A stretch of DNA of 64,000 nt from Pecten maximus. Taxonomy: Eukaryota. The notes beneath the pieces were generated by a model that had not been told where the DNA came from, searched no databases, and saw only the letters and a program-made list of their open reading frames with translations. Both the position numbers and the translations under genes were made by a program. Positions 2,417 through 56,096 of this stretch are shown piece after piece; the first letter of the stretch is position 1; each line of letters opens with the position of its first letter. Location of the stretch: positions 9,982,001-10,046,000 of the forward strand of contig NC_047020.1 in assembly GCF_902652985.1 (NCBI RefSeq), read 5' to 3'.

Positions 2417-5400
2417 ATGCCTACTGATGAGAAGGGAGCCCTGAATGGACCAGTGGGAGCTGTCTCCCCTCTCCGGCAGACAGTTGATGCTAGTATTGAC
2501 TTTATAGGAGGTGTCAATGGTAATATCTGGCTGTTATTAAAGATGTGTAATATGTTTCTGATGGGAATTTTTTTACTGTTTTTGATACTTTGATAAAGTA
2601 GCTTTTAATAATCTAGTGTATGTCCAGTAAATTGTATTTCTGACAATCTAATCCTAAAACTACCTTTTGATTATTTTAGAACTGTGTGATTCGTTATAGA
2701 GTAAAACAGGCTTGGTAGCTGATATAGATTTTAAAAGTAAATTTAAATCCACAAATAGGACTGTACCTGATTAGGTGATTTATTTCAAAATCCAAACAAA
2801 TTTCAGATCACAAATGTACATTGTATCAACATTTTCTCTGCATGGTCCTTTGTTATTTATTACATATACATGAAAAAAGCGTGAACAGTGTTTTTCAAAT
2901 TCAAATTTGAATGCAAGCAAGTTTGCTACACAACGAAGATGATTTTGTATTGAAATTCACAGTCTATTTGATAAATATTGTTTTCATGAATTATCTTAAA
3001 ATTGTATAATGTGTACATTTGTATACATGTATCTCTGATAGACACTGTCTGATTGAGTCTCCTATGTATGTTTCTACATCCATGATTCAAAGAATGACCC
3101 TTGGGTCTCAAATGTATGTTTCTGATACTGTCTGATTCATATACATCCAATGATTCTATGAATGAGTCTCAAATGAGAATTTCAGTCTGATTTGTTAAAA
3201 GTCTCAAACTACTACTATTATAGAGTTTCGGATTGACTGTAGTCCAAAAAACACTTTGGCACAAAATTATGTTCACAAATGTCACCAGTGTTCTATATTT
3301 ACAGGTGGAATAGCCAATGTCATAGTAGGGCAATCCCTGGATACAGTCAAGGTGAAGATGCAGACATTCCCAGGAATGTATAAGAATGCATTTGATTGTT
3401 TTATGAAAACATTCAGACAGGACGGTATACGAGGACTTTATGCTGGTACAGTCCCAGCCATGACAGCTAATATAGCTGAGAACTCGGTTCTATTTATGTT
3501 TTATGGTCTCTGTCAAAAGGTTGTAATGAACATATCAAAGAAGAAAAGTGTAGCTGATTTAAATCCTGTGGAGAATGCTTTATCAGGGAGCGGAGCAGCT
3601 TTCTTTTGTTCCTTCAGTCTCTGTCCAACAGAACTCATCAAATGTCGTCTACAGGCCATGAGAGAGATGGCGACACATGGAAAACTGGAGGGAGGCATAG
3701 AACAAATGAAAATGTTTGTAAAGTTTGGTGTTTCTTCCATTCATCCAGTGTTGAAGCACTGTTCAAATATTAAGTCAATCAAATAGTTTAAATGAAATAT
3801 AGCAACAGAACAGTTTATCTAACAGCTTCACTAAATACAGTGATTCCAAGTTCTAAATGATTAACACTGAGATGCAATGTAAATGTCAGTATGTAGCCAC
3901 AAATCAATACTGGTAAGATTGAATTATCAAACTTATTCATAGGTATAAGTCTTTTGTTAAATATTATTTAAAAGTTGTAAAGTCTGTTTTGTCTTTCTCT
4001 GACAGTGGTCCCTGGGGAATGACAAGAGAAATTCTGAAGCAGGAAGGAATTCCAGGAATGTTCAAGGGTCTCACCAGTACCATGGCTAGGGAAATGCCTG
4101 GATATTTCTTCTTCTTTGGAGGCTATGAAATCTCTCGTCACTACCTCACACCTCCAGGCAAAACAAAAGATGAGATTGGTATGTTTGATTATATCGGGAA
4201 TATAATAATACAAAAGATATGTAGACATGGAGCAGCTTTATGGGTAACATAAAGTACAATAATGTACCTTGATAAATGACAAGTGTTATGCATGTATCTG
4301 TAAAGTCATCAGCCAAACCTTGCAAACTTATTCAATATAATGTTACATCATTTTGAAGGTCAGCTAGGAAACATCTGATACATGTATATAAGATGGTGGG
4401 AGATATTGGATATGTAAGATGGTGGGTGTGTCTGATATATAAGATGGTGGGTGTGTCTGATATGTAAGATGGTGGGTTATGTCTGATATGTAAGATGGTG
4501 GGAGATGTCTGATATGTAAGATGGTGGGAGATGTCTGATATGTAAGATGGTGGGAGATGTCTGATATGTAAGATGGTGGGTTATGTCTGATATGTAAGAT
4601 GGTGGGAGATGTCTGATATGTAAGATGGTGGGAGATGTCTGATATGTAAGATGGTGGGTGTGTCTGATATGTAAGATAATGGGTTATGTCTGATATGTAA
4701 GATGGTGGGAGATGTCTGATATGTAAGATGGTGGGTGTGTCTGATATGTAAGATGGTGGGTGTGTCTGATATGTAAGATGGTGGGAGATGTCTGATATAT
4801 AAGATGGTGGGTGATGTCTGATATGTAAGATGGTGGGAGATGTCTGATATTTAAGATGGTGGGTGTGTCTGATATGTAAGATGGTGGGTGTGTCTGATAT
4901 GTAAGATGGTGGGTGTGTCTGATATGTAAGATGGTGGGTGTGTCTGATATGTAAGATGGTGGGTGTGTCTGATATGTAAGATGGTGGGTGTGTCTGATAT
5001 GTAAGATGGTGGGTGATGCCTGATATAAGATGGTGGGTGATGTCTGATATGTAAGATGGTGGGTGATGTCTGATATGTAAGATGGTGGGTGTGTCTGATA
5101 TATAAGATGGTGGGTGTGTCTGATATGTAAGATGGTGGGTGTGTCTGATGTGTAAGAAGGCGAGAGATATGTGATGTGTGAGAGACAATTTGGTATTTAC
5201 AGGAAATGTGATGTGTAAGATGGTGAATACTATTGTGACCTGATATCAGGATTAGAATACATGAATATTTTGATAAGAAGTTTTTATTAAAAATGTTTTA
5301 AGTTCTGATTATACATATAACTAATTTGTGTTTTATTGTAGGTGTATGGCGGACAGTGGTGTCTGGAGGGATAGGAGGGGTTTGTTTATGGACCTCTATC

Positions 5401-8400
5401 TTCCCTACAGACGTGGTTAAGTCAAGGATCCAAGTACAGAGTACAGTGGGTAAAAAGGCCCCATCTTTTTATAAAACTCTCACACATATCGGAAGGACAG
5501 AAGGTAATTATTGTAACAGGTATCATGGCCCTATATAATGGAATGTTTTTGTATTATAACAGGTATCAGAGCCCTATATAATACACTGTTTTTGTATTAT
5601 AACAGGTATCATGGCCCTATATAACATTCTGTTTTCTGTATTATAACAGGTATCAGGGCTCTATATAACATTCTGTTTTTGTATTATAACAGGTATCAGG
5701 GCTCTATATAACATTCTGTTTTCTGTATTATAACAGGTATCAGGGCCCTATATAACATTCTGTTTTTGTATTATAACAGGTATCAGGGCCCTATATATAA
5801 CATTCTGTTTTTGTATTATAACAGGTATCAGGGCCCTATATAACATTCTGTTTTTGTATTATAACAGGTATCAGGGCCCTATATATAACATTCTGTTTTT
5901 GTATTATAGCAGGTATCAGGGCCCTATATATAACATTCTGTTTTTGTATTATAGCAGGTATCAGGGCCCTATATATAACATTCTGTTTTTGTATTATAAC
6001 AGGTATCAGGGCCCTATATATAACATTCTGTTTTTGTATTATAACAGGTATCAGGGTCCTTTATAACATTCTGTTTTCTGTATTATAACAGGTATCAGGG
6101 TCCAATATAACATTCTGTTTTCTGTGTTATAACAGGTATCAGGGCTCTATATAACATTCTGTTTTCTGTGTTATAACAGGTATCAGGGCTCTATATAACA
6201 TTCTGTTTTTGTATTATAACAGGTATCAGGGCCCTATATAACATTCTGTTTTTGTATTATAACAGGTATCAGGGTCCTATATAACGTTCTGTTTTTGTAT
6301 TATAACAGGTATCAGGGCCCTATATATAACATTCTGTTTTTGTATTATAACAGGTATCAGGGTCCTTTATAACATTCTGTTTTCTGTATTATAACAGGTA
6401 TCAGGGTCCAATATAACATTCTGTTTTCTGTGTTATAACAGGTATCAGGGCTCTATATAACATTCTGTTTTCTGTGTTATAACAGGTATCAGGGCTCTAT
6501 ATAACATTCTGTTTTTGTATTATAACAGGTATCAGGGCCCTATATAACATTCTGTTTTTGTATTATAACAGGTATCAGGGCCCTATATAACATTCTGTTT
6601 TCTGTATTATAACAGGTATCAGGGTCCTATATAACGTTCTGTTTTCTGTATTATAACAGGTATCAGGGCCCTATATAACATTCTGTTTTCTGTATTATAA
6701 CAGGTATCAGGGTCCTATATAACATTCTGTTTTCTGTATTATAACAGGTATCAGGGCTCTATATATAATGTTCTGTTGTTGTATTATAACAGGTATCAGG
6801 GCTCTATATAACATTCTGTTTTCTGTATTATAACAGGTATCAGGGCCCTATATAACATTCTGTTTTCTGTATTATAACAGGTATCAGGGCCCTATATAAC
6901 ATTCTGTTTTCTGTATTATAACAGGTATCAGGGTCCTATATAACATTCTGTTTTCTGTATTATAACAGGTATCAGGGCTCTATATAACATTCTGTTTTTG
7001 TATTATAACAGGTATCAGGGCCCTATATAACATTCTGTTTTTGTATTATAACAGGTATCAGGGCCCTATATAACATTCTGTTTTTGTATTATAACAGGTA
7101 TCAGGGCTCTGTATAACATTCTGTTTTTGTATTATAACAGGTATCAGGGCCCTATATAACATTCTGTTTTTGTATTATAACAGGTATCAGGGCTCTATAT
7201 AACGTTCTGTTTTTGTATTATAACAGGTATCAGGGCCCTATATAACATTCTGTTTTTGTATTATAACAGGTATCAGGGCCCTATATAACATTCTGTTTTT
7301 GTATTATAACAGGTATCAGGGCCCTATATAACATTCTGTTGTTGTATTATAACAGGTATCAGGGCCCTATATAACGTTCTGTTTTTGTATTATAACAGGT
7401 ATCAGGGCCCTATATAACATTCTGTTTTCTGTATTATAACAGGTATCAGGGCCCTATATAACATTCTGTTTTTGTATTATAACAGGTATCAGGGCTCCTA
7501 TATAACATTCTGTTTTTTGTATTATAACAGGTATCAGGGCCTATAGTAACATTCTGTTTGTTGTATTATAACAGGTATCAGGGCCCTATATAATAACATG
7601 TCTGTTTTTCTCAATGATAGCAGGTATCAGGCGTTAAATAAAGAGGGACATTCTGTTTGTGTATTATAACGGTATCAGGGCTCTATATAACATCCGGTTT
7701 TTGTATTATACACAGGTCCAGGCTCTATATAACATTCTGTTTTTGTATTTAACAGGTATCAGTGGCTCTATATAACATTCTGTTTTTTGTATTATAACAG
7801 GTATCGAAGGGCTCTATAAACATTCTTGTTTTCTTTATTATACAGTATCCGGGTCCAATATACGTTCTGTTTTGTAATTATAACAGGTATCGGGAGGGCT
7901 TCTATATAACATTCTGTTTTCTGTATTATAACAGGTATCAGGGCTCTATATAACATTCTGTTTTTGTATTATAACAGGTATCAGGGCTCTATATAACATT
8001 CTGTTTTTGTATTATAACAGGTATCAGGGCTCTATATAACATTCTGTTTTCTGTATTATAACAGGTATCAGGGTCCAATATAACGTTCTGTTTTTGTATT
8101 ATAACAGGTATCAGGGCTCTATATAACATTCTGTTTTTGTATTATAACAGGTATCAGGGCCCTATATAACGTTCTGTTTTTGTATTATAACAGGTATCAG
8201 GGCCCTATATAACATTCTGTTTCTGTATTATAACAGGTATCAGGGCCCTATATAACGTTCTGTTTTTGTATTATAACAGGTATCAGGGCTCTATATAACA
8301 TTCTGTTTTCTGTATTATAACAGGTATCAGGGCTCTATATAACATTCTGTTTTCTGTATTATAACAGGTATCAGGGCCCTATATAACATTCTGTTTTCTG

Positions 8401-9186
8401 TATTATAACAGGTATCAGGGCCCTATATAACATTCTGTTTCTGTATTATAACAGGTATCAGGGTCCTATATAACATTATGTTTCTGTATTATAACAGGTA
8501 TCAGGGTCCTATATAACATTATGTTTTTGTATTATAACAGGTATCAGGGCCCTATATAACATTCTGTTTTTGTATTATAACAGGTATCAGGGCCCTATAT
8601 AACATTATGTTTTTGTATTATAACAGGTATCAGAGCCCTATATATAACATTCTGTTTTTGTATTATAACAGGTATCAGGGCCCTATATAACGTTCTGTTT
8701 TTGTATTATAACAGGTATCAGGGCTCTATATAACATTCTGTTTTTGTATTATAACAGGTATCAGGGCCCTATATAACATTCTGTTTTTGTATTATAACAG
8801 GTATCAGAGCCCTATATAATACACTATTTTTGTATTATAATAGGTATCAGGGCTCTATATAACATTCTGTTTTTGTATTATAACAGGTATCAGGGCTCTA
8901 TATAACATTCTGTTTTTGTATTATAACAGGTATCAGGGCCCTATATAACATTCTGTTTTTGTATTATAACAGGTATCAGGGCCCTATATAACATTCTGTT
9001 TTTGTATTATAACAGGTATCAGGGCCCTATATAACATTCTGTTTTTGTATTATAACAGGTATCAGGGCTCTATATAACGGGCTAGGACCAACGATTGTTA
9101 GGACTTTTCCATCTACTGGTGCCTTGTTTCTGACATATGAGACAACAAAGAAAGTACTGACAGACCTTGCCGACCAGAATGTGTGA
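2417..9186 (+). CDS. SLC25A15: Mitochondrial ornithine transporter 1-like carrier (SLC25 family), 5 coding exons, 324 aa
   Basis: Exons 2417-2519, 3305-3713, 4006-4178, 5342-5503 and 9059-9186 have GT-AG boundaries with compatible phases and sum to 975 nt. Three carrier repeats: GQSLDTVKVKMQ, CPTELIKCRLQ, FPTDVVKSRIQ. ORNT1-typical segments: ANIAENSVLF, AREMPGYFFFFGGYE, GGVCLW, PTIVRTFP..GALFLTYE. Confidence 0.93.
4373..5157. repeat. 25/26-bp minisatellite in SLC25A15 intron 3, ~30 copies
   Basis: Alternating units gtctgatatgtaagatggtgggtgt and gtctgatatgtaagatggtgggagat. Confidence 0.95.
5510..9078 (+). repeat. 43-45-bp tandem array (~80 copies) built from the acceptor site and first ~20 nt of SLC25A15 exon 5; fills intron 4
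   Basis: Unit attctgtttttgtattataacag|GTATCAGGGC(C/T)CTATATAAC. The last copy runs directly into unique coding sequence GGGCTAGGACCA at 9079. Confidence 0.97.
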
Positions 9187-10220
9187 TGATTTGTTTTTGT
9201 TGTGTTATTTTAGTTGAAATTTTTTAACTTTGTACATTGTAAACAGGTATTTATTGAACCATACATGGCATGGAATCTAACTTGGTCATCTTTGGTTTAA
9301 AAATAAGTATAATACTATTGCTATTGCTGCAGGGCAGTGTACTACTGTGGTAAAGAGAATTGGGTAAATGGAACCATTCATAATGGAATAATACTCAGAA
9401 CTACTAGCTATAGCTAACTATTATATTGACATAATACAGAAGATAATTAAAACTTGGAAAGTCAAAGCTCTACACACAAAAATGACGTTATGCACTTAAT
9501 GTTTTAGAGTGAGTTCTGAATTAAAGGTCATTGATTGATTAGCATAATGAAGAAGCAGGGCTTCCAGTAGACCTTTGAGAGTGTTTTTAGGAACAAGTCT
9601 ATTGGACATATGTTTTGAACATTCAGATTTCTGAGAAATAGTCATTTGACTTCTGATATTGCTAAAAATCAAGAGTTAGCAGGGTGCCTTGATGTGGTGT
9701 TATAATATTGAGTTAATGCTGTTCCATCATTAATTGTACAGAAGTGTCGATTGTGAATTGCTTACAGTAATAAGCCAGAGCTTTTATCCAAAGGTTTCTG
9801 ATATTTTATCCGCCTTTTGAATATATTATAAAATATGACACAATGTATCGGACACTATCATTTTTTTAAATGTTGATAAAACATTAGAAACCTTCGGATT
9901 ATTGGGGATTTAAAGTGTCACCTAGAGTTTTATTCAATGTATTCTTTAAAATCACTAATCTAATATTTGTGCCAAATGTTGTAGATTGATAGTGAATTTT
10001 AGATTGTAGAAATAGAATATTAATTACACGTCATATTTCCATTTCTCCAAAATCATTTATTGATATTAGATAACCCCAGTGTGTGAGAGGATTGGTATTA
10101 ATCACATTCCATCATGGAAGATTATGGCTGTTACATGTACAGAGGACTTTGTTAATGTTTGTATGACAGAATTCAATACCACGGAAATTTTATATTTTTA
10201 TGGCCAATGTCAGGAGATGT

Positions 10221-18635: not shown

Positions 18636-20853
18636 ACATACCTCTGTTTTCCTCACACCTGACGTAGGGGGGCAATGATGTTACCTTTTGTTACCCTGTA
18701 CTATAAACAAGACACCTCTATTTTCCTCACACCTGACGTAGGGGGGCAATGATGTTACCTTTTGTTACCTTACACTATAAACATGACATACCTCTGTTTT
18801 CCTCACACCTGACGTAGATGGCAATGATGTTACCTTTTGTTACCTTACACTATAAACAAGACATACCTCTGTTTTCCTCACACCTGACGTAGTTAACAGT
18901 GATGTTACCCTTTTGTTACCTTACACTATAAACATGACATACCTCTGTTTTCCTCACACCTGACGTAGGGGGGCAATGATGTTACCTTTTGTTACCTTAC
19001 ACTATAAACATGACATACCTCTGTTTTCCTCACACCTGACGTAGGGGGACAATGATGTTACCTTTTGTTACCTTACACTATAAACATGACATACCTCTGT
19101 TTTCCTCACACCTGACGTAGAGGGCAATGATGTTACCTTTTGTTACCTTACACTATAAACATGACATACCTCTGTTTTCCTCACACCTGACGTAGGGGGC
19201 AATGATGTTACCTTTTGTTACCTTACACTATAAACATGACATACCTCTGTTTTCCTCACACCTGACGTAGGGGGCAATGATGTTACCTTTTGTTACCTTA
19301 CACTATAAACAATGACATACCTCTGTTTTCCTCACACCTGACGTAGGGGGCAATGATGTTACCTTTTGTTACCTTACACTATAAACATGACATACCTCTG
19401 TTTTCCTCACACCTGACGTAGGGGGCAATGATGTTACCTTTTGTTACCTTACACTATAAACATGACATACCTCTGTTTTCCTCACACCTGACGTAGGGGG
19501 GCAATGATGTTACCTTTTGTTACCTTACACTATAAACATGACATACCTCTGTTTTCCTCACACCTGACGTAGAGGGCAATGATGTTACCTTTTGTTACCT
19601 TACACTATAAACATGACATACCTCTGTTTTCCTCACACCTGACGTAGGAGGGCAATGATGTTACCTTTTGTTACCTTACACTATAAATATGACATACCTC
19701 TGTTTTCCTCACACCTGACGTAGGGGGGCAATGATCTTACCCCTTGTTACCTTACACTATAAACATGACATACCTCTGTTTTCCTCACACCTGACGTAGG
19801 GGGCAATGATGTTACCTTTTGTTACCTTACACTATAAACATGACATACCTCTGTTTTCCTCACACCTGACGTAGGGGGCAATGACGTTACCTTTTGTTAC
19901 CTTACACTATAAACAAGACATACCTCTGTTTTCCTCACACCTGACGTAGGGGCAATGATGTTACCTTTTGTTACCTTACACTATAAACATGACATACCTC
20001 TGTTTTCCTCACACCTGACGTAGGGGCAATGATGTTACCCTTTTGTTACCTTACACTATAAACATGACATACCTCTGTTTTCCTCACACCTGACGTAGGG
20101 GGCAATGATGTTACCTTTTGTTACCTTACACTATAAACATGACATACCTCTGTTTTCCTCACACCTGACGTAGGGGGCAATGATGTTACCCTTTTGTTAC
20201 CTTACACTATAAACATGACATACCTCTGTTTTCCTCACACCTGACGTAGGGGGCAATGATGTTACCCCTTGTTACCTTACACTATAAACATGACATACCT
20301 CTGTTTTCCTCACACCTGACGTAGGGGGCAATGATGTTACCCTTTGTTACCTTACACTATAAACATGACATACCTCTGTTTTCCTCACACCTGACGTAGA
20401 GGGCAATGATGTTACCTTTTGTTACCTTACACTATAAACATGACATACCTCTGTTTTCTTCACACCTGACGTAGTTAACAGTGATGTTACCCTTTTGTTA
20501 CCTTACACTATAAACATGACATACCTCTGTTTTCCTCACACCTGACGTAGGGGGCAATGACGTTACCTTTTGTTACCTTACACTATAAACAAGACATACC
20601 TCTGTTTTCCTTACACCTGACGTAGTTAACAGTGATGTTACCCTTTTGTTACCTTACACTATAAACAAGACATACCTCTGTTTTCCTCACACCTGACGTA
20701 GACGACAGTAATGTTACCTTTTGTTACCGTACACTATAAACATGACATACCTCTGTTTTCCTGACTCTTGACGTAGGGGGCAATGATGTTACCCTTTTGT
20801 TACCTTACACTATAAACATGACATACCTCTGTTTTCCTGACTCTTGACGTAGG
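18636..20853 (-). repeat. ~75-bp tandem array (~30 copies) built from the PAN-exon end and splice donor of paralog A
   Basis: Minus-strand unit ...CCTACGTCAGGTGTGAGGAAAACAGAG|gtatgtcatgtttatagtgtaaggtaacaaaaggtaacatcattgccc. The true exon end reads CCTACGTCAAGAGTCAGGAAAACAGAG|gtatgt. Confidence 0.96.
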
Positions 20854-22309
20854 AGACAGTGCTGTTATCGTCCACACTGACGAGAGTGAACTCCAGTGGT
20901 AGGTCGTGTAATGGTCGGTAGTACCGTCGACATGTACTACTGTTGGAGTTGTAAACCATGTGGAAACATGACGACTGTATCTGACATCTCTCCAGGCAAA
21001 TTTGTAATGTGGTGTTTTTCGTGCTCACCTCGTTTGTCAATGTGTCCCATTCCTGTATCTCCATACCATGGTATTCGGTCATCTCAACTGTACCTTAGGA
21101 GAAATCACCTTTGCATTAATACTATAGCAGTCTTCAGTATCAATCATTCATATTCAGTTAACTGGGAAATATCTTTTCTCGCTAGCAATCAATTAGATGT
21201 GGCCTCACTTTTTATAACAAGCAGTTACTGATTTAAAGTATAAGTTTATATAGTTTTGATTTCAGTGATAAATGCTGTGTATGCCTGTTCGAAACATTCT
21301 TTGAAGGAATCTGATTTGTACGATTAAAAATGGGCTTTTTGAATTCATTTTATTCGTGCAATGAACGGATCCTGAAATCAAGATCCATGTCACCATCTAG
21401 TCAGAAATATCTGAAGCCTGAAACTGTTTATTTTCAAAAGACACGCATTGGTTGAAGTGTTGGTATTAATTATTACGTTATATAAATGAGCTAGTGAATA
21501 CATTTTCATTTAGGTATTGGAAGGGCGTATGTTGTTCCCCTCCGCTTAACTCTTGTGTAAATTTTATACTTTACAATTATACTTGAGAGGGAACATACCA
21601 TCTTTCTGTCAGGTCTAACATGAAGTGTTTTCTTAGAAAAAAAGACTACTAAGGTATATCATGTTGTCTAATTCTTTTTACAATGCTATATTTACTTGTA
21701 TACGTGGTTTAATATCGTTAATAAATTGGTGAAAAAAGTATATCAAGATATTTGTATTTTCCTAATTCTTACCAGCACCGGCTGCACAGACGAAGGAATG
21801 CCTTTCTTGGCACGACGCGGCGTACCAACTTTGTGTTATTACCCTGGTATTCTCTGTCATGTTAAGTAGAAGGCACTGTCGTTGATTATCATCATCATTA
21901 GAAAAGGAACTGTCGTCAGCCAATGGACTTGAACACTTCCCGCTTATGTACCACTACCCGTCCAAGTTAGGATTTATAAATCCTAACCACAGCGGATGTC
22001 TTACCTGTCTAAAAAGACACAAACCTGATGTATTCATTTTCCATTCTGTCATAGAATATCACAAGTATCGACACTTTCTATCAAATCTCACATTTACACA
22101 TTAATTTATTCACAAATCTGAAATCACCACTAAAGAGATCATTTTTGATAAGGCTCCAATCGAGAACAAACTGGAAGGACCACAAAATTCATATTGTTTT
22201 ACATTTATACAATATGTAGTACGCTCGATACGTTAGATGTGGATTCAACCTCAAATAAGTTATACTAGATAAAACAACCTCTACCGACAGATAACACATG
22301 GAGTTCCAT

Positions 22310-23649
22310 GCTTGGCTCCACTGTATTTATTCCTGGTTCCACTATTTATTCTTGACTCCACTGTATTTATTCCTGGTTCCACTATTTATTCTTGACTCCA
22401 CTGTATTTATTCTTGGCTCCACTGTATTTATTCTTGGCTCCACTGTATTTATTCTTGGCTCCACTGTATTTATTCTTGGCTCCACTGTATTTATTCTTGG
22501 CTCCACTGTATTTATTCTTGGCTCCACTGTATTTATTCTTGACTCCACTGTATTTATTCTTGGCTCCACTGTATTTATTCCTGGCTCCACTGTATTTATT
22601 CCTGGCTCCACTGTATTTATTCCTGGCTCCACTGTATTTATTCTTGACTCCACTGTATTTATTCCTGGCTCCACTGTATTTATTCCTGGCTCCACTGTAT
22701 TTATTCCTGGCTCCATTGTATTTATTCTTGGCTCCACTGTATTTATTCTTGGCTTCACTGTATTTATTCCTGGCTCCATTGTATTTATTCCTGGCTCCAC
22801 TGTATTTATTCTTGGCTCCACTGTATTTATTCTTGGCTCCACTGTATTTATTCCTGGCTCCACTGTATTTATTCTTGGCTCCACTGTATTTATTCTTGGC
22901 TCCACTGTATTTATTCTTGGCTCCACTGTATTTATTCCTGGCTCCACTGTATTTATTCTTGGCTCCACTGTATTTATTCCTGGCTCCACTGTATTTATTC
23001 CTGGCTCCACTGTATTTATTCTTGGCTCCACTGTATTTATTCTTGGCTTCACTGTATTTATTCCTGGCTTCACTGTATTTATTCCTGGCTCCACTGTATT
23101 TATTCTTGGCTCCACTGTATTTATTCCTGTCTCCACTGTATTTATTCCTGGCTCCACTATATTTATTCTTGGCTCCATTGTATTTATTCTTGACTCCACT
23201 GTATTTATTCTTGGCTCTACTGTATTTATTCCTGGCTCCACTGTATTTATTCCTGGCTCCACTGTATTTATTCCTGGCTCCACTGTATTTATTCTTGGCT
23301 CCATTGTATTTATTCCTGGCTCCACTGTATTTATTCTTGGCTCCACTGTATTTATTCTTGGCTCCACTGTATTTATTCTTGGCTCCACTGTATTTATTAC
23401 TGGCTCCACTGTATTTATTCTTGGCTCCACTGTATTTATTCCTGGCTCCACTGTATTTATTCTTGGCTCCATTGTATTTATTCCTGGCTCCACTGTATTT
23501 ATTCCTGGCTCCACTGTATTTATTCCTGGCTTCACTATTTATTCCTCACTCCACTGTATTTATTCTTGGCTCCACTGTATTTATTCTTGGCTCCACTGTA
23601 TTTATTCCTGGCTCCACTGTATTTATTCTTGGCTTCACTGTATTTATTG
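22310..23649. repeat. 21-bp minisatellite, ~63 copies, intronic in paralog A
   Basis: Unit ggctccactgtatttattc(c/t)t. The three 400-450 aa ORFs here are translations of this unit. Confidence 0.97.
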
Positions 23650-25519: not shown

Positions 25520-26158
25520 TTTTATTTTGGCTCCAATGTATTTTTTTCCTGGCTCCACGTATTATCTTGTTTCACTGTATTTATTCTTCCCATTGTATTT
25601 AATTTGCCTCCACTGTATTTATTCTGGCTCCACTTATTTATTTTTTGGCTCCACTTTATTTATTCTTGGCTCCACTGTAATTTATTCCGGGCTCACGTAT
25701 TATCCTGCTCCACTATTTATTCTGGCTCCCTGTATTCCTGGCTTCACTGTATTTATTCTTGGCTCCACTGTATTTATTCCTGGCTCCACTGTATTTATTC
25801 TTGGCTCCACTGTATTTATTCTTGGCTCCACTGTATTTATTCCCGGCTCCACTGTATTTATTCCTGGCTCCACTGTATTTATTCTTGGCTCCACTGTATT
25901 TATTCCTGTCTCCACTGTATTTATTCTTGGCTCCACTGTATTTATTCTTGGCTTCACTGTATTTATTCTTGGCTCCATTGTATTTATTCTTGGCTCCACT
26001 GTATTTATTCTTGGCTCCATTGTATTTATTCCTGGCTCCACTGTATTCATTCCTGGCTCCACTGTATTTATTCCTGGCTTCAATGTATTTATTCTTGGCT
26101 CCACTGTATTTGTTCTTGGCTTCACTGTATTTATTCTTTGCTTCAGTGTTTTTATTGA
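25520..26158. repeat. Second copy of the 21-bp minisatellite
   Basis: Same unit as 22310-23649, followed by the same unique flank (gaacacatgtatgttccaacgaga...). The first ~200 bp are indel-rich. Confidence 0.95.
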
Positions 26159-54200: not shown

Positions 54201-56096
54201 TATATCACCACCCAGTAATGTTACAGATCACTCCATACTCACTATCTTGTAGTATCACCCAGTAGTGGTACAGATCACTCCATACTCACTATCTTGTAGT
54301 ATCACCCAGTAGTGGTACAGATCACTCCATACTCACTATCTTGTAGTATCACCCAGTAGTGGTACAGATCACTCCACACTCACTAACTTGTCATATCACC
54401 ACCCAGTAGTGGTACAGATCACTCCATACTCACTATCTTGTTATATCACCACCCAGTAGTGGTACAGGTCACTTATTTACCGATAACGATTGATGTTCAC
54501 AGCAAATACTTTTACATTTGTTTATATCTTGTCTTTTTCAGTTCAGTATACAGATTCCATCACTGAACCAAACAACACAATAATAAACGTAACAGGTAAC
54601 TATGTCCTTAATATATTCGAGATTTACAAAGAGGACTGTTTTATATGACATTGTCATCATTAGATTAACATAAACGTTAGATTCTCTATAATGACAGACA
54701 ATGATCTGAATCGTATTAGTTTTTGCTTTAAAAAAAGGCGAGAAATCTGACTAAGTAAAGATGGCCAAGACTTTTTTAAAAGTAACACATGTCTATTTCA
54801 TACATCGTGATATGAGAGGAAAGAAGCCAGCTTATTGTTGGACAATTAAGTCATTATCATATTGTCTAATTTTTTTTCGTGTAAATTTCAAGATTATCAA
54901 ACTTTTTTTTATTCCATTGCTTTGGTGAATGCCTTGTCATTTGAATACTACTTTTATTCGAGAGGGATGAATATGATATATCCTTGTCTTCAATTGTAAT
55001 ATTGATTAATCCTTTGCTAAACGTTTTAAAATTATAGGCCGAAGCTATGTCTTTTTCTATTTTTGTTATTGATGTAGCAACATATGGTTCTGCTGCAAAA
55101 CATGTAACTAATTCTGGACACGCTTACAGGTTACTTAGCATGGGGAGAGGATTTAACGCAGACCATCATCGTAGTATCAAATGCTACCTGGTTTGATGCA
55201 GTCGAAGAATGTAAAGCCTTGCAGGGTTATATGACTTTGTCTGGACCATTTGGCGTTCCTTTTGTTTATATAAGAAAACAATTGTTTATCCATTTCCAGG
55301 AGTAAGTATCACCTACTTTTGCCAGGTATGTCGTAAATACTACGTTTATCGTCATTCGTCTTTCCATAAGCGATTAACATGACATGATTCTACTATTTTT
55401 TATTTAATTTAGGTTGATTGGAGAACCGCTGTGGATTGGTTTTCACAAACCAAATTTGGACGGAGTATGGTATATCGGCACAGACTGTGGTAATCCCCTG
55501 GACAAGACATCTTACAACACATTTGACAATGATGACGCCACCAAGCGACAATGTGTCTTACTAAACACAACAACTAATCCTAGTAATATAGATTTCAGCT
55601 GGTATGCAGCATCATGTCATGAACGCCACTCCTTTATTTGCACCAAGTATCTAGGCAAGTACTTGTTATTCAAATTTCAGATATTCTATAGTATATAAAG
55701 AAATGCAGTNNNNNNNNNNNNNNNNNNNNNNNNNNNNNNNNNNNNNNNNNNNNNNNNNNNNNNNNNNNNNNNNNNNNNNNNNNNNNNNNNNNNNNNNNNN
55801 NNNNNNNNNNNNNNNNNNNNNNNNNNNNNNNNNNNNNNNNNNNNNNNNNNNNNNNNNNNNNNNNNNNNNNNNNNNNNNNNNNNNNNNNNNNNNNNNNNNN
55901 NNNNNNNNNNNNNNNNNNNNNNNNNNNNNNNNNNNNNNNNNNNNNNNNNNNNNNNNNNNNNNNNNNNNNNNNNNNNNNNNNNNNNNNNNNNNNNNNNNNN
56001 NNNNNNNNNNNNNNNNNNNNNNNNNNNNNNTGATGATTGATGATGATGGTGGTGGTGAGAACGAGGATGATTATTGCAGATGAGGATGATGACTAT

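What the first reader, a model, noticed from the sequence alone, without database searches (positions are those of the whole stretch)
5504..9078. An entire 3.5-kb intron made of ~80 copies of its own 3' splice site
Seen: within about 10 nt of the exon-4 donor the intron becomes a 43-45-bp array. Each unit is pyrimidine tract + taacag + the first ~20 nt of exon 5 (G-I-R-A-L-Y-N). Only the final copy (9059) leads into the rest of the protein. Using a typical earlier copy gives GIRALYNILFLYYNRYQGPI-stop and loses TM helix 6. An apparently intact housekeeping gene must therefore pick the last of ~80 near-identical acceptors. The hexamer tataac occurs both in the exon start and in the intron, a plausible slippage microhomology (inference).
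Basis: seen in the sequence. Interest (0 to 1): 0.9.

Follow-up and report, generated by a model that had tools for sequence, protein, structure and literature searches.

The report
Splice-acceptor minisatellite filling a scallop intron
The last intron of the king scallop's single-copy mitochondrial ornithine-transporter gene consists almost entirely of about 80 tandem copies of its own intron/exon border, a real and striking example of an already known repeat type ("mirage" minisatellite) that recurs in this genome, and how the cell avoids the false copies could not be tested here.

Summary
Window 5509-9078 is a 43-45 bp tandem array of 81.7 copies. Each unit is the last 23 nt of intron 4 plus the first 20 nt of exon 5 of a five-exon mitochondrial carrier gene.

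The gene's exons are 100% identical to Pecten maximus XP_033742414.1 (ornithine transporter 1-like, 324 aa). That model joins exon 4 to the last copy at 9059. The gene is single-copy, and the unit occurs nowhere else in the 918-Mb assembly.

38 decoys match the true acceptor exactly over -20..+3. Using a decoy without further splicing would end the protein after 13-95 residues and remove transmembrane helix 6.

This is not a new kind of element. [quoted passage not shown] The human F7 gene has a donor-side equivalent. This scan has already reported many such arrays elsewhere in this same genome, and I re-checked three of them.

The mechanism for choosing the last copy stays open. The decoys are either ignored (my favoured reading) or used and then corrected by re-splicing, since every copy is AG|GT.

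The parts
2417..2519 (+). Exon 1, coding part (ATG at 2417) of the mitochondrial ornithine transporter 1-like gene
   Evidence: The translation is 100% identical to P0211 / XP_033742414.1.
3305..3713 (+). Exon 2. It uses the weak donor AAT|GTTTGT.
   Evidence: Pfam Mito_carr E 4.5e-25. The end at 3713 is required by the ...MKIGPWG... junction of P0211 and its orthologs. Donor listing.
4006..4178 (+). Exon 3
   Evidence: Mito_carr E 1.8e-9; 100% identical to P0211.
5342..5503 (+). Exon 4, ending ...GGACAGAAG, with donor AAG|GTAATT
   Evidence: Mito_carr profile positions 6-57, E 4.4e-9; 100% identical to P0211; donor.
5504..9058 (+). Intron 4 (3555 nt). Everything except its first 5 nt belongs to the array.
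5509..9078 (+). Junction ('mirage'-type) minisatellite: 80 decoy copies plus the true copy of [23 nt of intron end + 20 nt of exon-5 start]. Every copy carries AG|GT.
   Evidence: TRF; unit list; identity to the true site; found only at this locus in the genome.
5981..6580 (+). Recent higher-order duplication inside the array: a 7-unit, 306-bp block repeated, with a 294-nt exact match
   Evidence: Offset scan and unit-type string ...EHIJBAP EHIJBAC....
7486..7934 (+). Indel-rich, degenerate copies in the middle of the array. They are either poorly polished long-read consensus or truly decayed units. Both AG losses lie here.
   Evidence: 2-9 or more indels per unit here, against 0-2 elsewhere. 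The assembly method (wtdbg2 + Arrow + freebayes) is described in PMC7191990.
9030..9035 (+). TATAAC, the best branch-site candidate for the true acceptor (branch A at about -25). It lies in the exon-derived half of the last decoy unit.
   Evidence: Position. Its role as branch site is inferred from the UNAY core and the spacing, and was not tested.
9059..9186 (+). Exon 5 (G)IRALYNGLGPT...DQNV-stop. Its first 20 nt (9059-9078) form the exon part of the repeat unit.
   Evidence: Mito_carr profile positions 60-94, E 9e-9; 100% identical to the P0211 C-terminus; conserved in Ylistrum, Mizuhopecten and Argopecten.

Best explanation
This is a locus-specific splice-junction minisatellite of the 'mirage' type in the last intron of the Pecten maximus ornithine transporter 1-like (SLC25A15-type) gene.

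Origin. A 43-bp segment spanning the intron-4/exon-5 border was duplicated in tandem. It holds 23 nt of polypyrimidine tract plus AG, and 20 nt coding G-I-R-A-L-Y-N. The array then grew by slippage or unequal exchange to about 80 copies. A recent 306-bp block duplication shows this process at work. A secondary deletion or homogenisation removed the rest of the old intron, so the array now begins 5 nt after the donor. The exon part is the ancestral sequence, because GIRALYNG is conserved in carriers from arthropods to molluscs.

Structure of each period. Each period is a complete 3' splice-site module. It has a branch-site-like TATAAC about 25 nt upstream, a pyrimidine tract, and AG. Each AG is followed by GT.

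Splicing. The mature mRNA joins exon 4 to the last copy.
- Most likely (about 0.5), the decoys are passed over. Only the last copy is followed by real exon body and by the terminal-exon/poly(A) context that stabilises U2AF/U2 binding.
- Less likely (about 0.2-0.25), some decoys are used and the product AAG|GTATCA is re-spliced to a later copy until none is left.

On either reading the array is a tolerated by-product of a minisatellite-rich genome and not a device.

Shown: the anatomy, the locus specificity, the identity of the host gene, and that the annotated product uses the last copy. Inferred: the origin steps, the branch site, and the way the last copy is chosen.
For: Array and unit anatomy. 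The unit is found only at this locus in 918 Mb. The exons are 100% identical to XP_033742414.1, 324 aa, whose C-terminus needs the acceptor at 9059. The gene is single-copy, with the next-best matches about 33% identical. The same GRTE|GIRALYNG junction and C-terminus appear in three other scallop genera, and in a transcript-sized Logan contig protein, P0270. GIRALY(N/S)G is conserved in distant orthologs. A 306-bp higher-order duplication is present. Published precedent: amphioxus BflGb6 has tandem copies of an intron 3' end plus exon start, and RT-PCR shows regular splicing (PMC3087553). Human F7 IVS7 pseudo-donors are functional yet silent (PMC1557585). Recurrence in this genome that I verified: a donor-type array at window 18636-20867 beside a PAN-domain exon, and acceptor-type arrays in L019 and L020.
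Against: The use of the last copy therefore rests on a RefSeq model and on conservation. With 80 decoys, even 1% use per decoy would spoil about 40% of transcripts, so 'ignored' requires a near-absolute rule that is not identified. Predicted local RNA accessibility does not set the true acceptor apart: it ranks 52 of 79 over -23..-1. The last few decoys sit only 43-200 nt upstream of the true site and share the same terminal-exon context. The noisy stretch 7486-7934 means the copy number is approximate.
Confidence: 0.8

Rival explanations
1. Self-correcting (recursive, 'ratchet') splicing is the main route. Exon 4 is first joined to any decoy. The junction AAG|GTATCA then acts as a new 5' splice site and is spliced to a later copy. 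AG|GT sites inside the array can also splice to each other in register. The only end state with no acceptor left downstream is exon 4 joined to exon 5, so the final mRNA is correct whichever decoy is hit first.
For: Every copy is AG|GT with a pyrimidine tract and a TATAAC about 25 nt upstream. By a simple count, the regenerated site matches the 5' splice-site consensus at 5 of 9 positions, with a run of 5 contiguous matches. That equals the gene's own intron-1 donor and is no worse than its intron-2 donor. The internal CAG|GTATCA matches 6 of 9. The array sits in the last intron, so the regenerated donor at the true junction has nothing downstream to splice to. Outside the noisy stretch, the AG, GTATCA and TATAAC columns show variants in only 1 of 14 columns, against 19 of 32 other columns. 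AGGT dual-specific sites are used in human tandem repeats such as UBC and VCX3A (PMC10809524). A second acceptor array (L019) has AG|GTGAGC in every copy.
Against: GTATCA lacks the +4 to +6 consensus found at known ratchet sites (GTAAGT or GTGAGT). Exon junction complexes are reported to repress re-splicing at regenerated 5' sites; this is from my own knowledge of Blazquez 2018 and Boehm 2018, which were not read here. In a third array (L020) the decoys are AG|GC, so AG|GT is not required for such arrays to persist. The invariance of the signal columns can also come from homogenisation, and columns 1-5 were used to anchor the units. No junction or lariat reads are available.
Confidence: 0.2
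2. Decoys are used at a substantial rate and are not corrected. The gene yields a mixture of full-length carrier and transcripts that end after 13-95 extra residues without helix 6. The loss is either tolerated or acts as a copy-number-dependent brake on expression.
For: 38 decoys are identical to the true site over -20..+3, and accessibility does not favour the true site. A premature stop would lie in the last exon, where junction-dependent decay does not act (general knowledge). Early duplicated-site experiments reported use of the proximal copy (as summarised in PMC1557585).
Against: The protein is highly conserved in length and sequence among four scallop genera (87-93% identity), and the gene is single-copy. 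RefSeq lists one product, which uses the last copy. A search with exon 4 found no decoy-terminated fragment in a 5.8-billion-protein collection, although Pecten maximus transcripts seem absent from it. Other follow-ups of this scan reported that only the genuine copy was joined in assembled RNA at similar arrays (not checked by me).
Confidence: 0.12
3. The array is an assembly artefact, or its length is grossly inflated or collapsed.
For: The stretch 7486-7934 is full of small indels, typical of an unpolished long-read consensus. The assembly was built with wtdbg2 from PacBio Sequel reads (PMC7191990).
Against: There is no gap in or near the array; the only N run is at 55710-56030. There are 36 distinct unit variants in an ordered pattern with a 306-bp higher-order block, which is not what a collapsed or looped assembly gives. 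Both borders join cleanly to unique exons. Coverage was 65.9x with reads long enough to span 3.5 kb. Many similar arrays exist in this genome.
Confidence: 0.05

Closest known systems
Amphioxus 'mirage' minisatellites (Adh3, Canestro et al. 2002; globin BflGb6/BflGb9, Ebner et al. 2010, PMC3087553)
   Same: They are tandem repeats whose unit spans an exon-intron border. BflGb6 repeats the 3' end of an intron plus the 5' part of the next exon, with the authentic copy at the end of the array. Many units keep AG/GT signals. RT-PCR shows regular splicing. Array edges are more diverged than the interior.
   Different: BflGb6 has 3-6 units of 150-160 bp and Adh3 has 10-72 bp units. Here there are about 80 units of 43-45 bp that occupy the whole intron up to 5 nt from the donor. 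The host is a mollusc, and the array sits in the terminal intron. Splicing at this locus is not yet shown by RNA.
Human F7 intron 7 37-bp VNTR (Borensztajn et al. 2006, PMC1557585)
   Same: The minisatellite's end unit contains the real splice junction, so identical pseudo-sites follow the authentic one. The pseudo-sites are functional when tested but silent in vivo.
   Different: F7 repeats the donor 5-9 times and the copy next to the exon (the most upstream) is chosen, which the authors explain by 5'-to-3' scanning. Here the acceptor is repeated about 80 times and the most downstream copy must be chosen, which simple 5'-to-3' scanning does not explain.
Dual-specific splice sites in tandem repeats (UBC, VCX3A; Duan et al. 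2024, PMC10809524)
   Same: An AGGT motif recurs once per repeat unit, so units can be spliced out in register. The authors argue that such expansions are less harmful because they can be removed.
   Different: In UBC and VCX3A both ends of the intron are repeat copies, and the repeat is coding. Here the donor (exon-4 end) is not a repeat copy, the intron length (3555 nt) is not a multiple of the unit, and use of the sites as donors is untested.
Recursive (ratchet) splice sites of long Drosophila and vertebrate introns
   Same: A polypyrimidine tract plus AG is directly followed by GT, so that splicing regenerates a 5' splice site.
   Different: Known ratchet sites are single conserved sites in very long introns with a strong GTAAGT or GTGAGT. 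Here there are 80 young copies with a weak GTATCA, 43 nt apart. There is no read evidence.
Other junction minisatellites of the same Pecten maximus genome reported by this scan
   Same: The construction is the same. I re-checked a 75-bp donor-type array in this window (18636-20867), a 45-bp x 16 acceptor-type array (L019) and a 52-bp x 48 acceptor-type array (L020) on the same chromosome.
   Different: This one replaces the entire intron and lies in the terminal intron of a single-copy metabolic gene. An array of about 240 copies elsewhere is reported to be larger (not checked by me).

Membership tests
Mirage-type splice-junction minisatellite | Tandem array of minisatellite-sized units | tested here: met
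   Period 43, 81.7 copies, 92% matches.
Mirage-type splice-junction minisatellite | The unit contains both intron and exon sequence of the adjoining junction, and the authentic junction is the terminal copy | tested here: met
   The unit is 23 nt of intron end plus 20 nt of exon 5. The array ends at 9078 inside exon 5. The exon is confirmed by 100% identity to XP_033742414.1.
Mirage-type splice-junction minisatellite | Derived from the gene itself, not from a dispersed repeat | tested here: met
   All 39 genome hits of the unit lie inside this array, and the control gives 0. The exon part encodes the conserved carrier motif GIRALYNG.
Mirage-type splice-junction minisatellite | Regular splicing is maintained despite the copies | tested here: inconclusive
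   Only the RefSeq model and the conservation of the C-terminus speak for it.
Mirage-type splice-junction minisatellite | Length instability or polymorphism | not testable with these tools
   The assembly holds a single copy of the locus. A recent 306-bp internal duplication shows turnover but not polymorphism.
Recursive (ratchet) splice site | A 3' splice site juxtaposed with a 5' splice site (Yn-AG|GT) | tested here: met
   78 of 80 copies read ...TTTTTGTATTATAACAG|GTATCA.
Recursive (ratchet) splice site | Strong regenerated 5' splice site (GTAAGT or GTGAGT type) | tested here: not met
   AAG|GTATCA matches 5 of 9 consensus positions and none at +4 to +6. It is, however, no weaker than two genuine donors of the same gene.
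Recursive (ratchet) splice site | Junction reads, lariats or a sawtooth read pattern showing stepwise removal | not tested
   No run ids could be obtained.
Dual-specific-site repeat intron (UBC/VCX3A type) | Both intron ends are copies of the repeat, so the intron length is a multiple of the unit | tested here: not met
   The exon-4 end and donor are not repeat copies. 3555/43 = 82.7.
Mitochondrial carrier SLC25A15 / ornithine transporter (host gene) | Three Mito_carr repeats and orthology to named ornithine transporters | tested here: met
   PF00153 is found on all four tested exons. The best full-length relatives are named mitochondrial ornithine transporter 1 across arthropods and molluscs. 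Identity to the Pecten maximus entry is 100%. Transport activity itself was not tested.

The most novel reading that the evidence does not exclude
Large acceptor-side junction arrays in this scallop are tolerated because they are splicing-neutral by construction. Every copy is a dual AG|GT site, so any first choice of decoy regenerates a donor. Stochastic multi-step re-splicing then drives all transcripts to the single end state with no acceptor left, which is the genuine exon. That would make this 80-copy intron a natural recursive-splicing ratchet with a weak, non-canonical regenerated donor. It would also predict that acceptor-type arrays are enriched at exons starting with GT and in terminal introns.
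Probability: 0.2. Interest if true: 0.7.

Novelty: new member of a known kind. Interest (0 to 1): 0.35.

Why it matters
The locus is a natural experiment in 3' splice-site choice. There are 80 acceptors, 38 of them letter-for-letter identical to the real one across the window that splice-site scoring uses. They compete in a conserved single-copy gene whose product needs the very last one. Whatever rule gives the right answer (terminal-exon definition, distal preference, or re-splicing at AG|GT) must be almost absolute. The same genome offers many arrays of different size, side and sequence for comparison. For annotation, the locus is a warning that splice-site predictors cannot place this acceptor from local sequence. 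In itself it is one more member of a known repeat class, probably without function.

Tried and rejected
I did not resend it in another form, so read laying could not be used.

The age of the array and the ancestral intron are therefore unknown.

3. Decoy-terminated or unspliced products in the protein collection. A search with exon 4 alone returned three fragments, none from Pecten maximus. The closest, P0270, is a normally spliced relative. This is uninformative for this species.

4. RNA structure masking the decoys. The array folds better than shuffles (z = -3.98). But local unpaired probabilities do not single out the true acceptor: it ranks 52 of 79 for -23..-1 and 74 of 79 for -8..-1. No support.

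5. Dispersed repeat or transposon origin. Rejected, because the unit is unique to the locus.

6. TATAAC microhomology as the cause of the 43-nt unit. Rejected as stated, because the two copies are 21-23 nt apart inside the unit.

7. Intron birth by duplication of an exonic AGGT (Rogers model). Not supported. The intron start GTAATTATTG and the intron end do not match the exon-5 start or the exon-4 end beyond GTA.

8. A backup paralog. None: the next-best genomic matches are about 33% identical.

9. Joined protein model. Exons were searched one by one by reference, and the database entry P0211 served as the full-length form.

10. The N run at 55710-56030 was left untouched.
Full report
WHAT IS THERE. 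Tandem Repeats Finder reports one array at window 5509-9078: period 43, 81.7 copies, 92% matches, score 5755. Reading it directly and splitting it at GTATC gives 80 unit starts before the exon start at 9059. Units are 43, 44 or 45 nt long, and 36 distinct variants occur. The commonest unit is GTATCAGGGCCCTATATAAC + ATTCTGTTTTTGTATTATAACAG. The second half is the last 23 nt of the intron, and the first half is the first 20 nt of exon 5. 78 of 80 unit starts are preceded by AG, and all begin with GT. 38 decoys equal the true acceptor over -20..+3, and 5 equal it over -23..+20. The array begins 5 nt after the donor G of exon 4, so the 3555-nt intron is array throughout.

HOST GENE. The exons are 2417-2519, 3305-3713, 4006-4178, 5342-5503 and 9059-9186. 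Each tested exon hits Pfam Mito_carr. Their translations are 100% identical to P0211, which is XP_033742414.1, 'mitochondrial ornithine transporter 1-like [Pecten maximus]', 324 aa. The genome handle has 918,306,378 bases in 3,983 contigs. That is exactly the published king-scallop assembly (PMC7191990). The gene is single-copy: the next-best genomic matches are about 33% identical carriers, and no second haplotype contig carries the 3' end. Orthologs of Ylistrum, Mizuhopecten and Argopecten have the same length, the same ...GRTE|GIRALYNG... junction region and the same C-terminus. A transcript-sized contig protein from a related scallop (P0270) is spliced the same way. The database entry stood in for the full-length protein.

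DIRECTION OF COPYING. G(I/V)RALY(N/S)G is conserved in ornithine carriers from springtails to molluscs. The unit occurs nowhere else in the genome: 39 hits with up to 3 mismatches all lie inside the array, and the reversed control gives 0. So the repeat was copied from the gene's junction. The exon did not arise from a repeat, and no transposon is involved.

ARRAY HISTORY.
- The unit-type string shows a seven-unit, 306-bp block present twice, with a 294-nt exact match. This is the mark of recent unequal exchange.
- The first two units and one unit near the 3' end (8801) are the most diverged, as is usual for array edges.
- The left edge is a truncated unit (TATTGTAACAG) directly behind GTAAT. 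A secondary deletion or homogenisation must therefore have removed the rest of the old intron while sparing the minimal donor. This is inference.
The two TATAAC copies lie 21-23 nt apart within the unit, not 43 nt apart at its borders.

IS IT REAL? There is no gap in or near the array. The ordered variant pattern argues against a collapsed or looped assembly. Both borders join to unique exons. Units at 7486-7934 carry many small indels and both AG losses. Given a wtdbg2 assembly of PacBio Sequel reads polished with Arrow and freebayes, this looks like poorly polished consensus. The copy number is therefore approximate. I could not lay reads on the locus.

CONSEQUENCES OF DECOY USE. Reading from exon 4 into a decoy without further splicing gives a stop after 20 residues (35 decoys) or after 13 residues (19 decoys). 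Through runs of 45-nt units the stop can come after up to 95 residues. In every case the last carrier helix, encoded by exon 5, is lost (profile positions 60-94). The stop would lie in the final exon. Junction-dependent decay would therefore not remove such RNAs, although a long 3' UTR might. Both points are general knowledge.

HOW THE LAST COPY COULD BE CHOSEN. Each period holds a full acceptor module. It has a TATAAC with its branch-type A about 25 nt upstream of the AG, then a pyrimidine tract, then AG. For the true acceptor, that TATAAC (9030-9035) lies in the exon-derived half of the last decoy. This is inference. I tested or weighed three ideas.
1. Masking by RNA structure. The array folds better than shuffled sequence (z = -3.98). 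But local unpaired probabilities do not single out the true site: it ranks 52 of 79 over -23..-1. No support.
2. Re-splicing. Joining exon 4 to any copy creates AAG|GTATCA, which matches the donor consensus at 5 of 9 positions in one run. That equals the gene's own intron-1 donor and is no worse than its intron-2 donor AAT|GTTTGT. The internal CAG|GTATCA matches 6 of 9. Because this is the last intron, the regenerated donor at the genuine junction has no acceptor left to use. Re-splicing is therefore possible and would be self-correcting. Against it, the site lacks the +4 to +6 consensus of known ratchet sites, and no reads exist.
3. Exon context. Only the last copy is followed by real exon body and the poly(A) region. 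ATTAAA occurs 260 and 334 nt after the stop, and AATAAA at 1303 nt. This is my favoured reading, by analogy with the silent but functional pseudo-donors of F7 and the regular splicing of amphioxus mirages. However, with 80 decoys it needs a nearly absolute rule that I cannot name.
My odds are: ignored about 0.5, re-splicing 0.2-0.25, leaky use 0.12, artefact 0.05.

WHAT IS KNOWN.
[quoted passage not shown] They were found again in globin genes. BflGb6 repeats the intron 3' end plus the exon start 3-6 times, and RT-PCR shows normal splicing (PMC3087553).
- Human F7 intron 7 carries a 37-bp VNTR whose first unit contains the donor. The 5-9 identical pseudo-donors are functional but unused (PMC1557585).
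- AGGT dual-specific sites recurring in tandem repeats (UBC, VCX3A) are spliced in register, and are argued to make expansions less harmful (PMC10809524).
The present array is an acceptor-side mirage. It fails the UBC-type criterion, because its donor is not a repeat copy.

RECURRENCE IN THIS GENOME. Earlier notes of this scan list many such arrays in the same assembly, several already followed up and filed as mirages. I re-checked three myself.
- Window 18636-20867, minus strand: about 30 copies of a 75-bp unit made of the end of a PAN-domain exon plus CAGAG|GTATGT.
- L019: 16 copies of 45 bp, each ending TGTAG|GTGAGCAG, before a deubiquitinase-like exon.
- L020: 48 copies of 52 bp. The true copy is CTAG|GT but the decoys are CTAG|GC.
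So AG|GT decoys are common but not universal.

NOT DONE. No RNA or genomic reads could be examined, and no orthologous introns could be fetched.

VERDICT. It is a new member of a known kind and one of many in this genome. No evidence of function was found.

Noticed in passing
window 18636-20867 (minus strand): A donor-type junction array of about 30 copies of a 75-bp unit. The unit is made of the last ~30 nt of a PAN-domain exon (PF00024, E 5.9e-6) plus the donor CAGAG|GTATGT. The genuine copy is the one next to the exon, at 20827/20828.
   Followed up: partly
window 4385-5157: Intron 3 of the same ornithine-transporter gene holds 30 copies of a 26-bp unit. Each unit contains a consensus-like donor motif (GTAAGA). 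I saw no sign that it derives from a junction.
   Followed up: no
L019:1028-1744 (G000:C6:9576027-9576743, minus strand): An acceptor-type array of 16 copies of 45 bp. Every copy ends TGTAG|GTGAGCAG, which is a strong ratchet-like AG|GTGAG. The exon behind it reads [28 protein letters not shown], which looks like USP12/46 by eye. A 56-aa piece gave no Pfam hit.
   Followed up: partly
L020:1518-3981 (G000:C6:28799517-28801980, minus strand): An acceptor-type array of 48 copies of 52 bp. The genuine copy is CTAG|GTCTGG but the decoys are CTAG|GCCTGG, so here the decoys cannot regenerate a GT donor.
   Followed up: partly
window 3305, 5342, 9059: Three of the four acceptors of this gene are AG|GT (phase-1 introns splitting glycine codons). 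The background frequency of AG|GT may therefore be high in this gene family, which weakens any enrichment argument.
   Followed up: no
window 3710-3723: Exon 2 uses the weak donor AAT|GTTTGT, although a better-looking GTAAAG lies 4 nt downstream. The choice is fixed by the conserved ...MKIGPWG... junction in four scallop genera.
   Followed up: partly
window 9583-9700: A dispersed repeat of about 110 bp lies roughly 400 nt after the stop codon. It has at least 40 copies of 83-88% identity across the genome.
   Followed up: no
window 22311-23648 and 25521-26156: Two arrays of the same 21-bp unit (CTTGGCTCCACTGTATTTATT) lie 2 kb apart. In all, about a dozen minisatellite arrays occur in 64 kb.
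   Followed up: no
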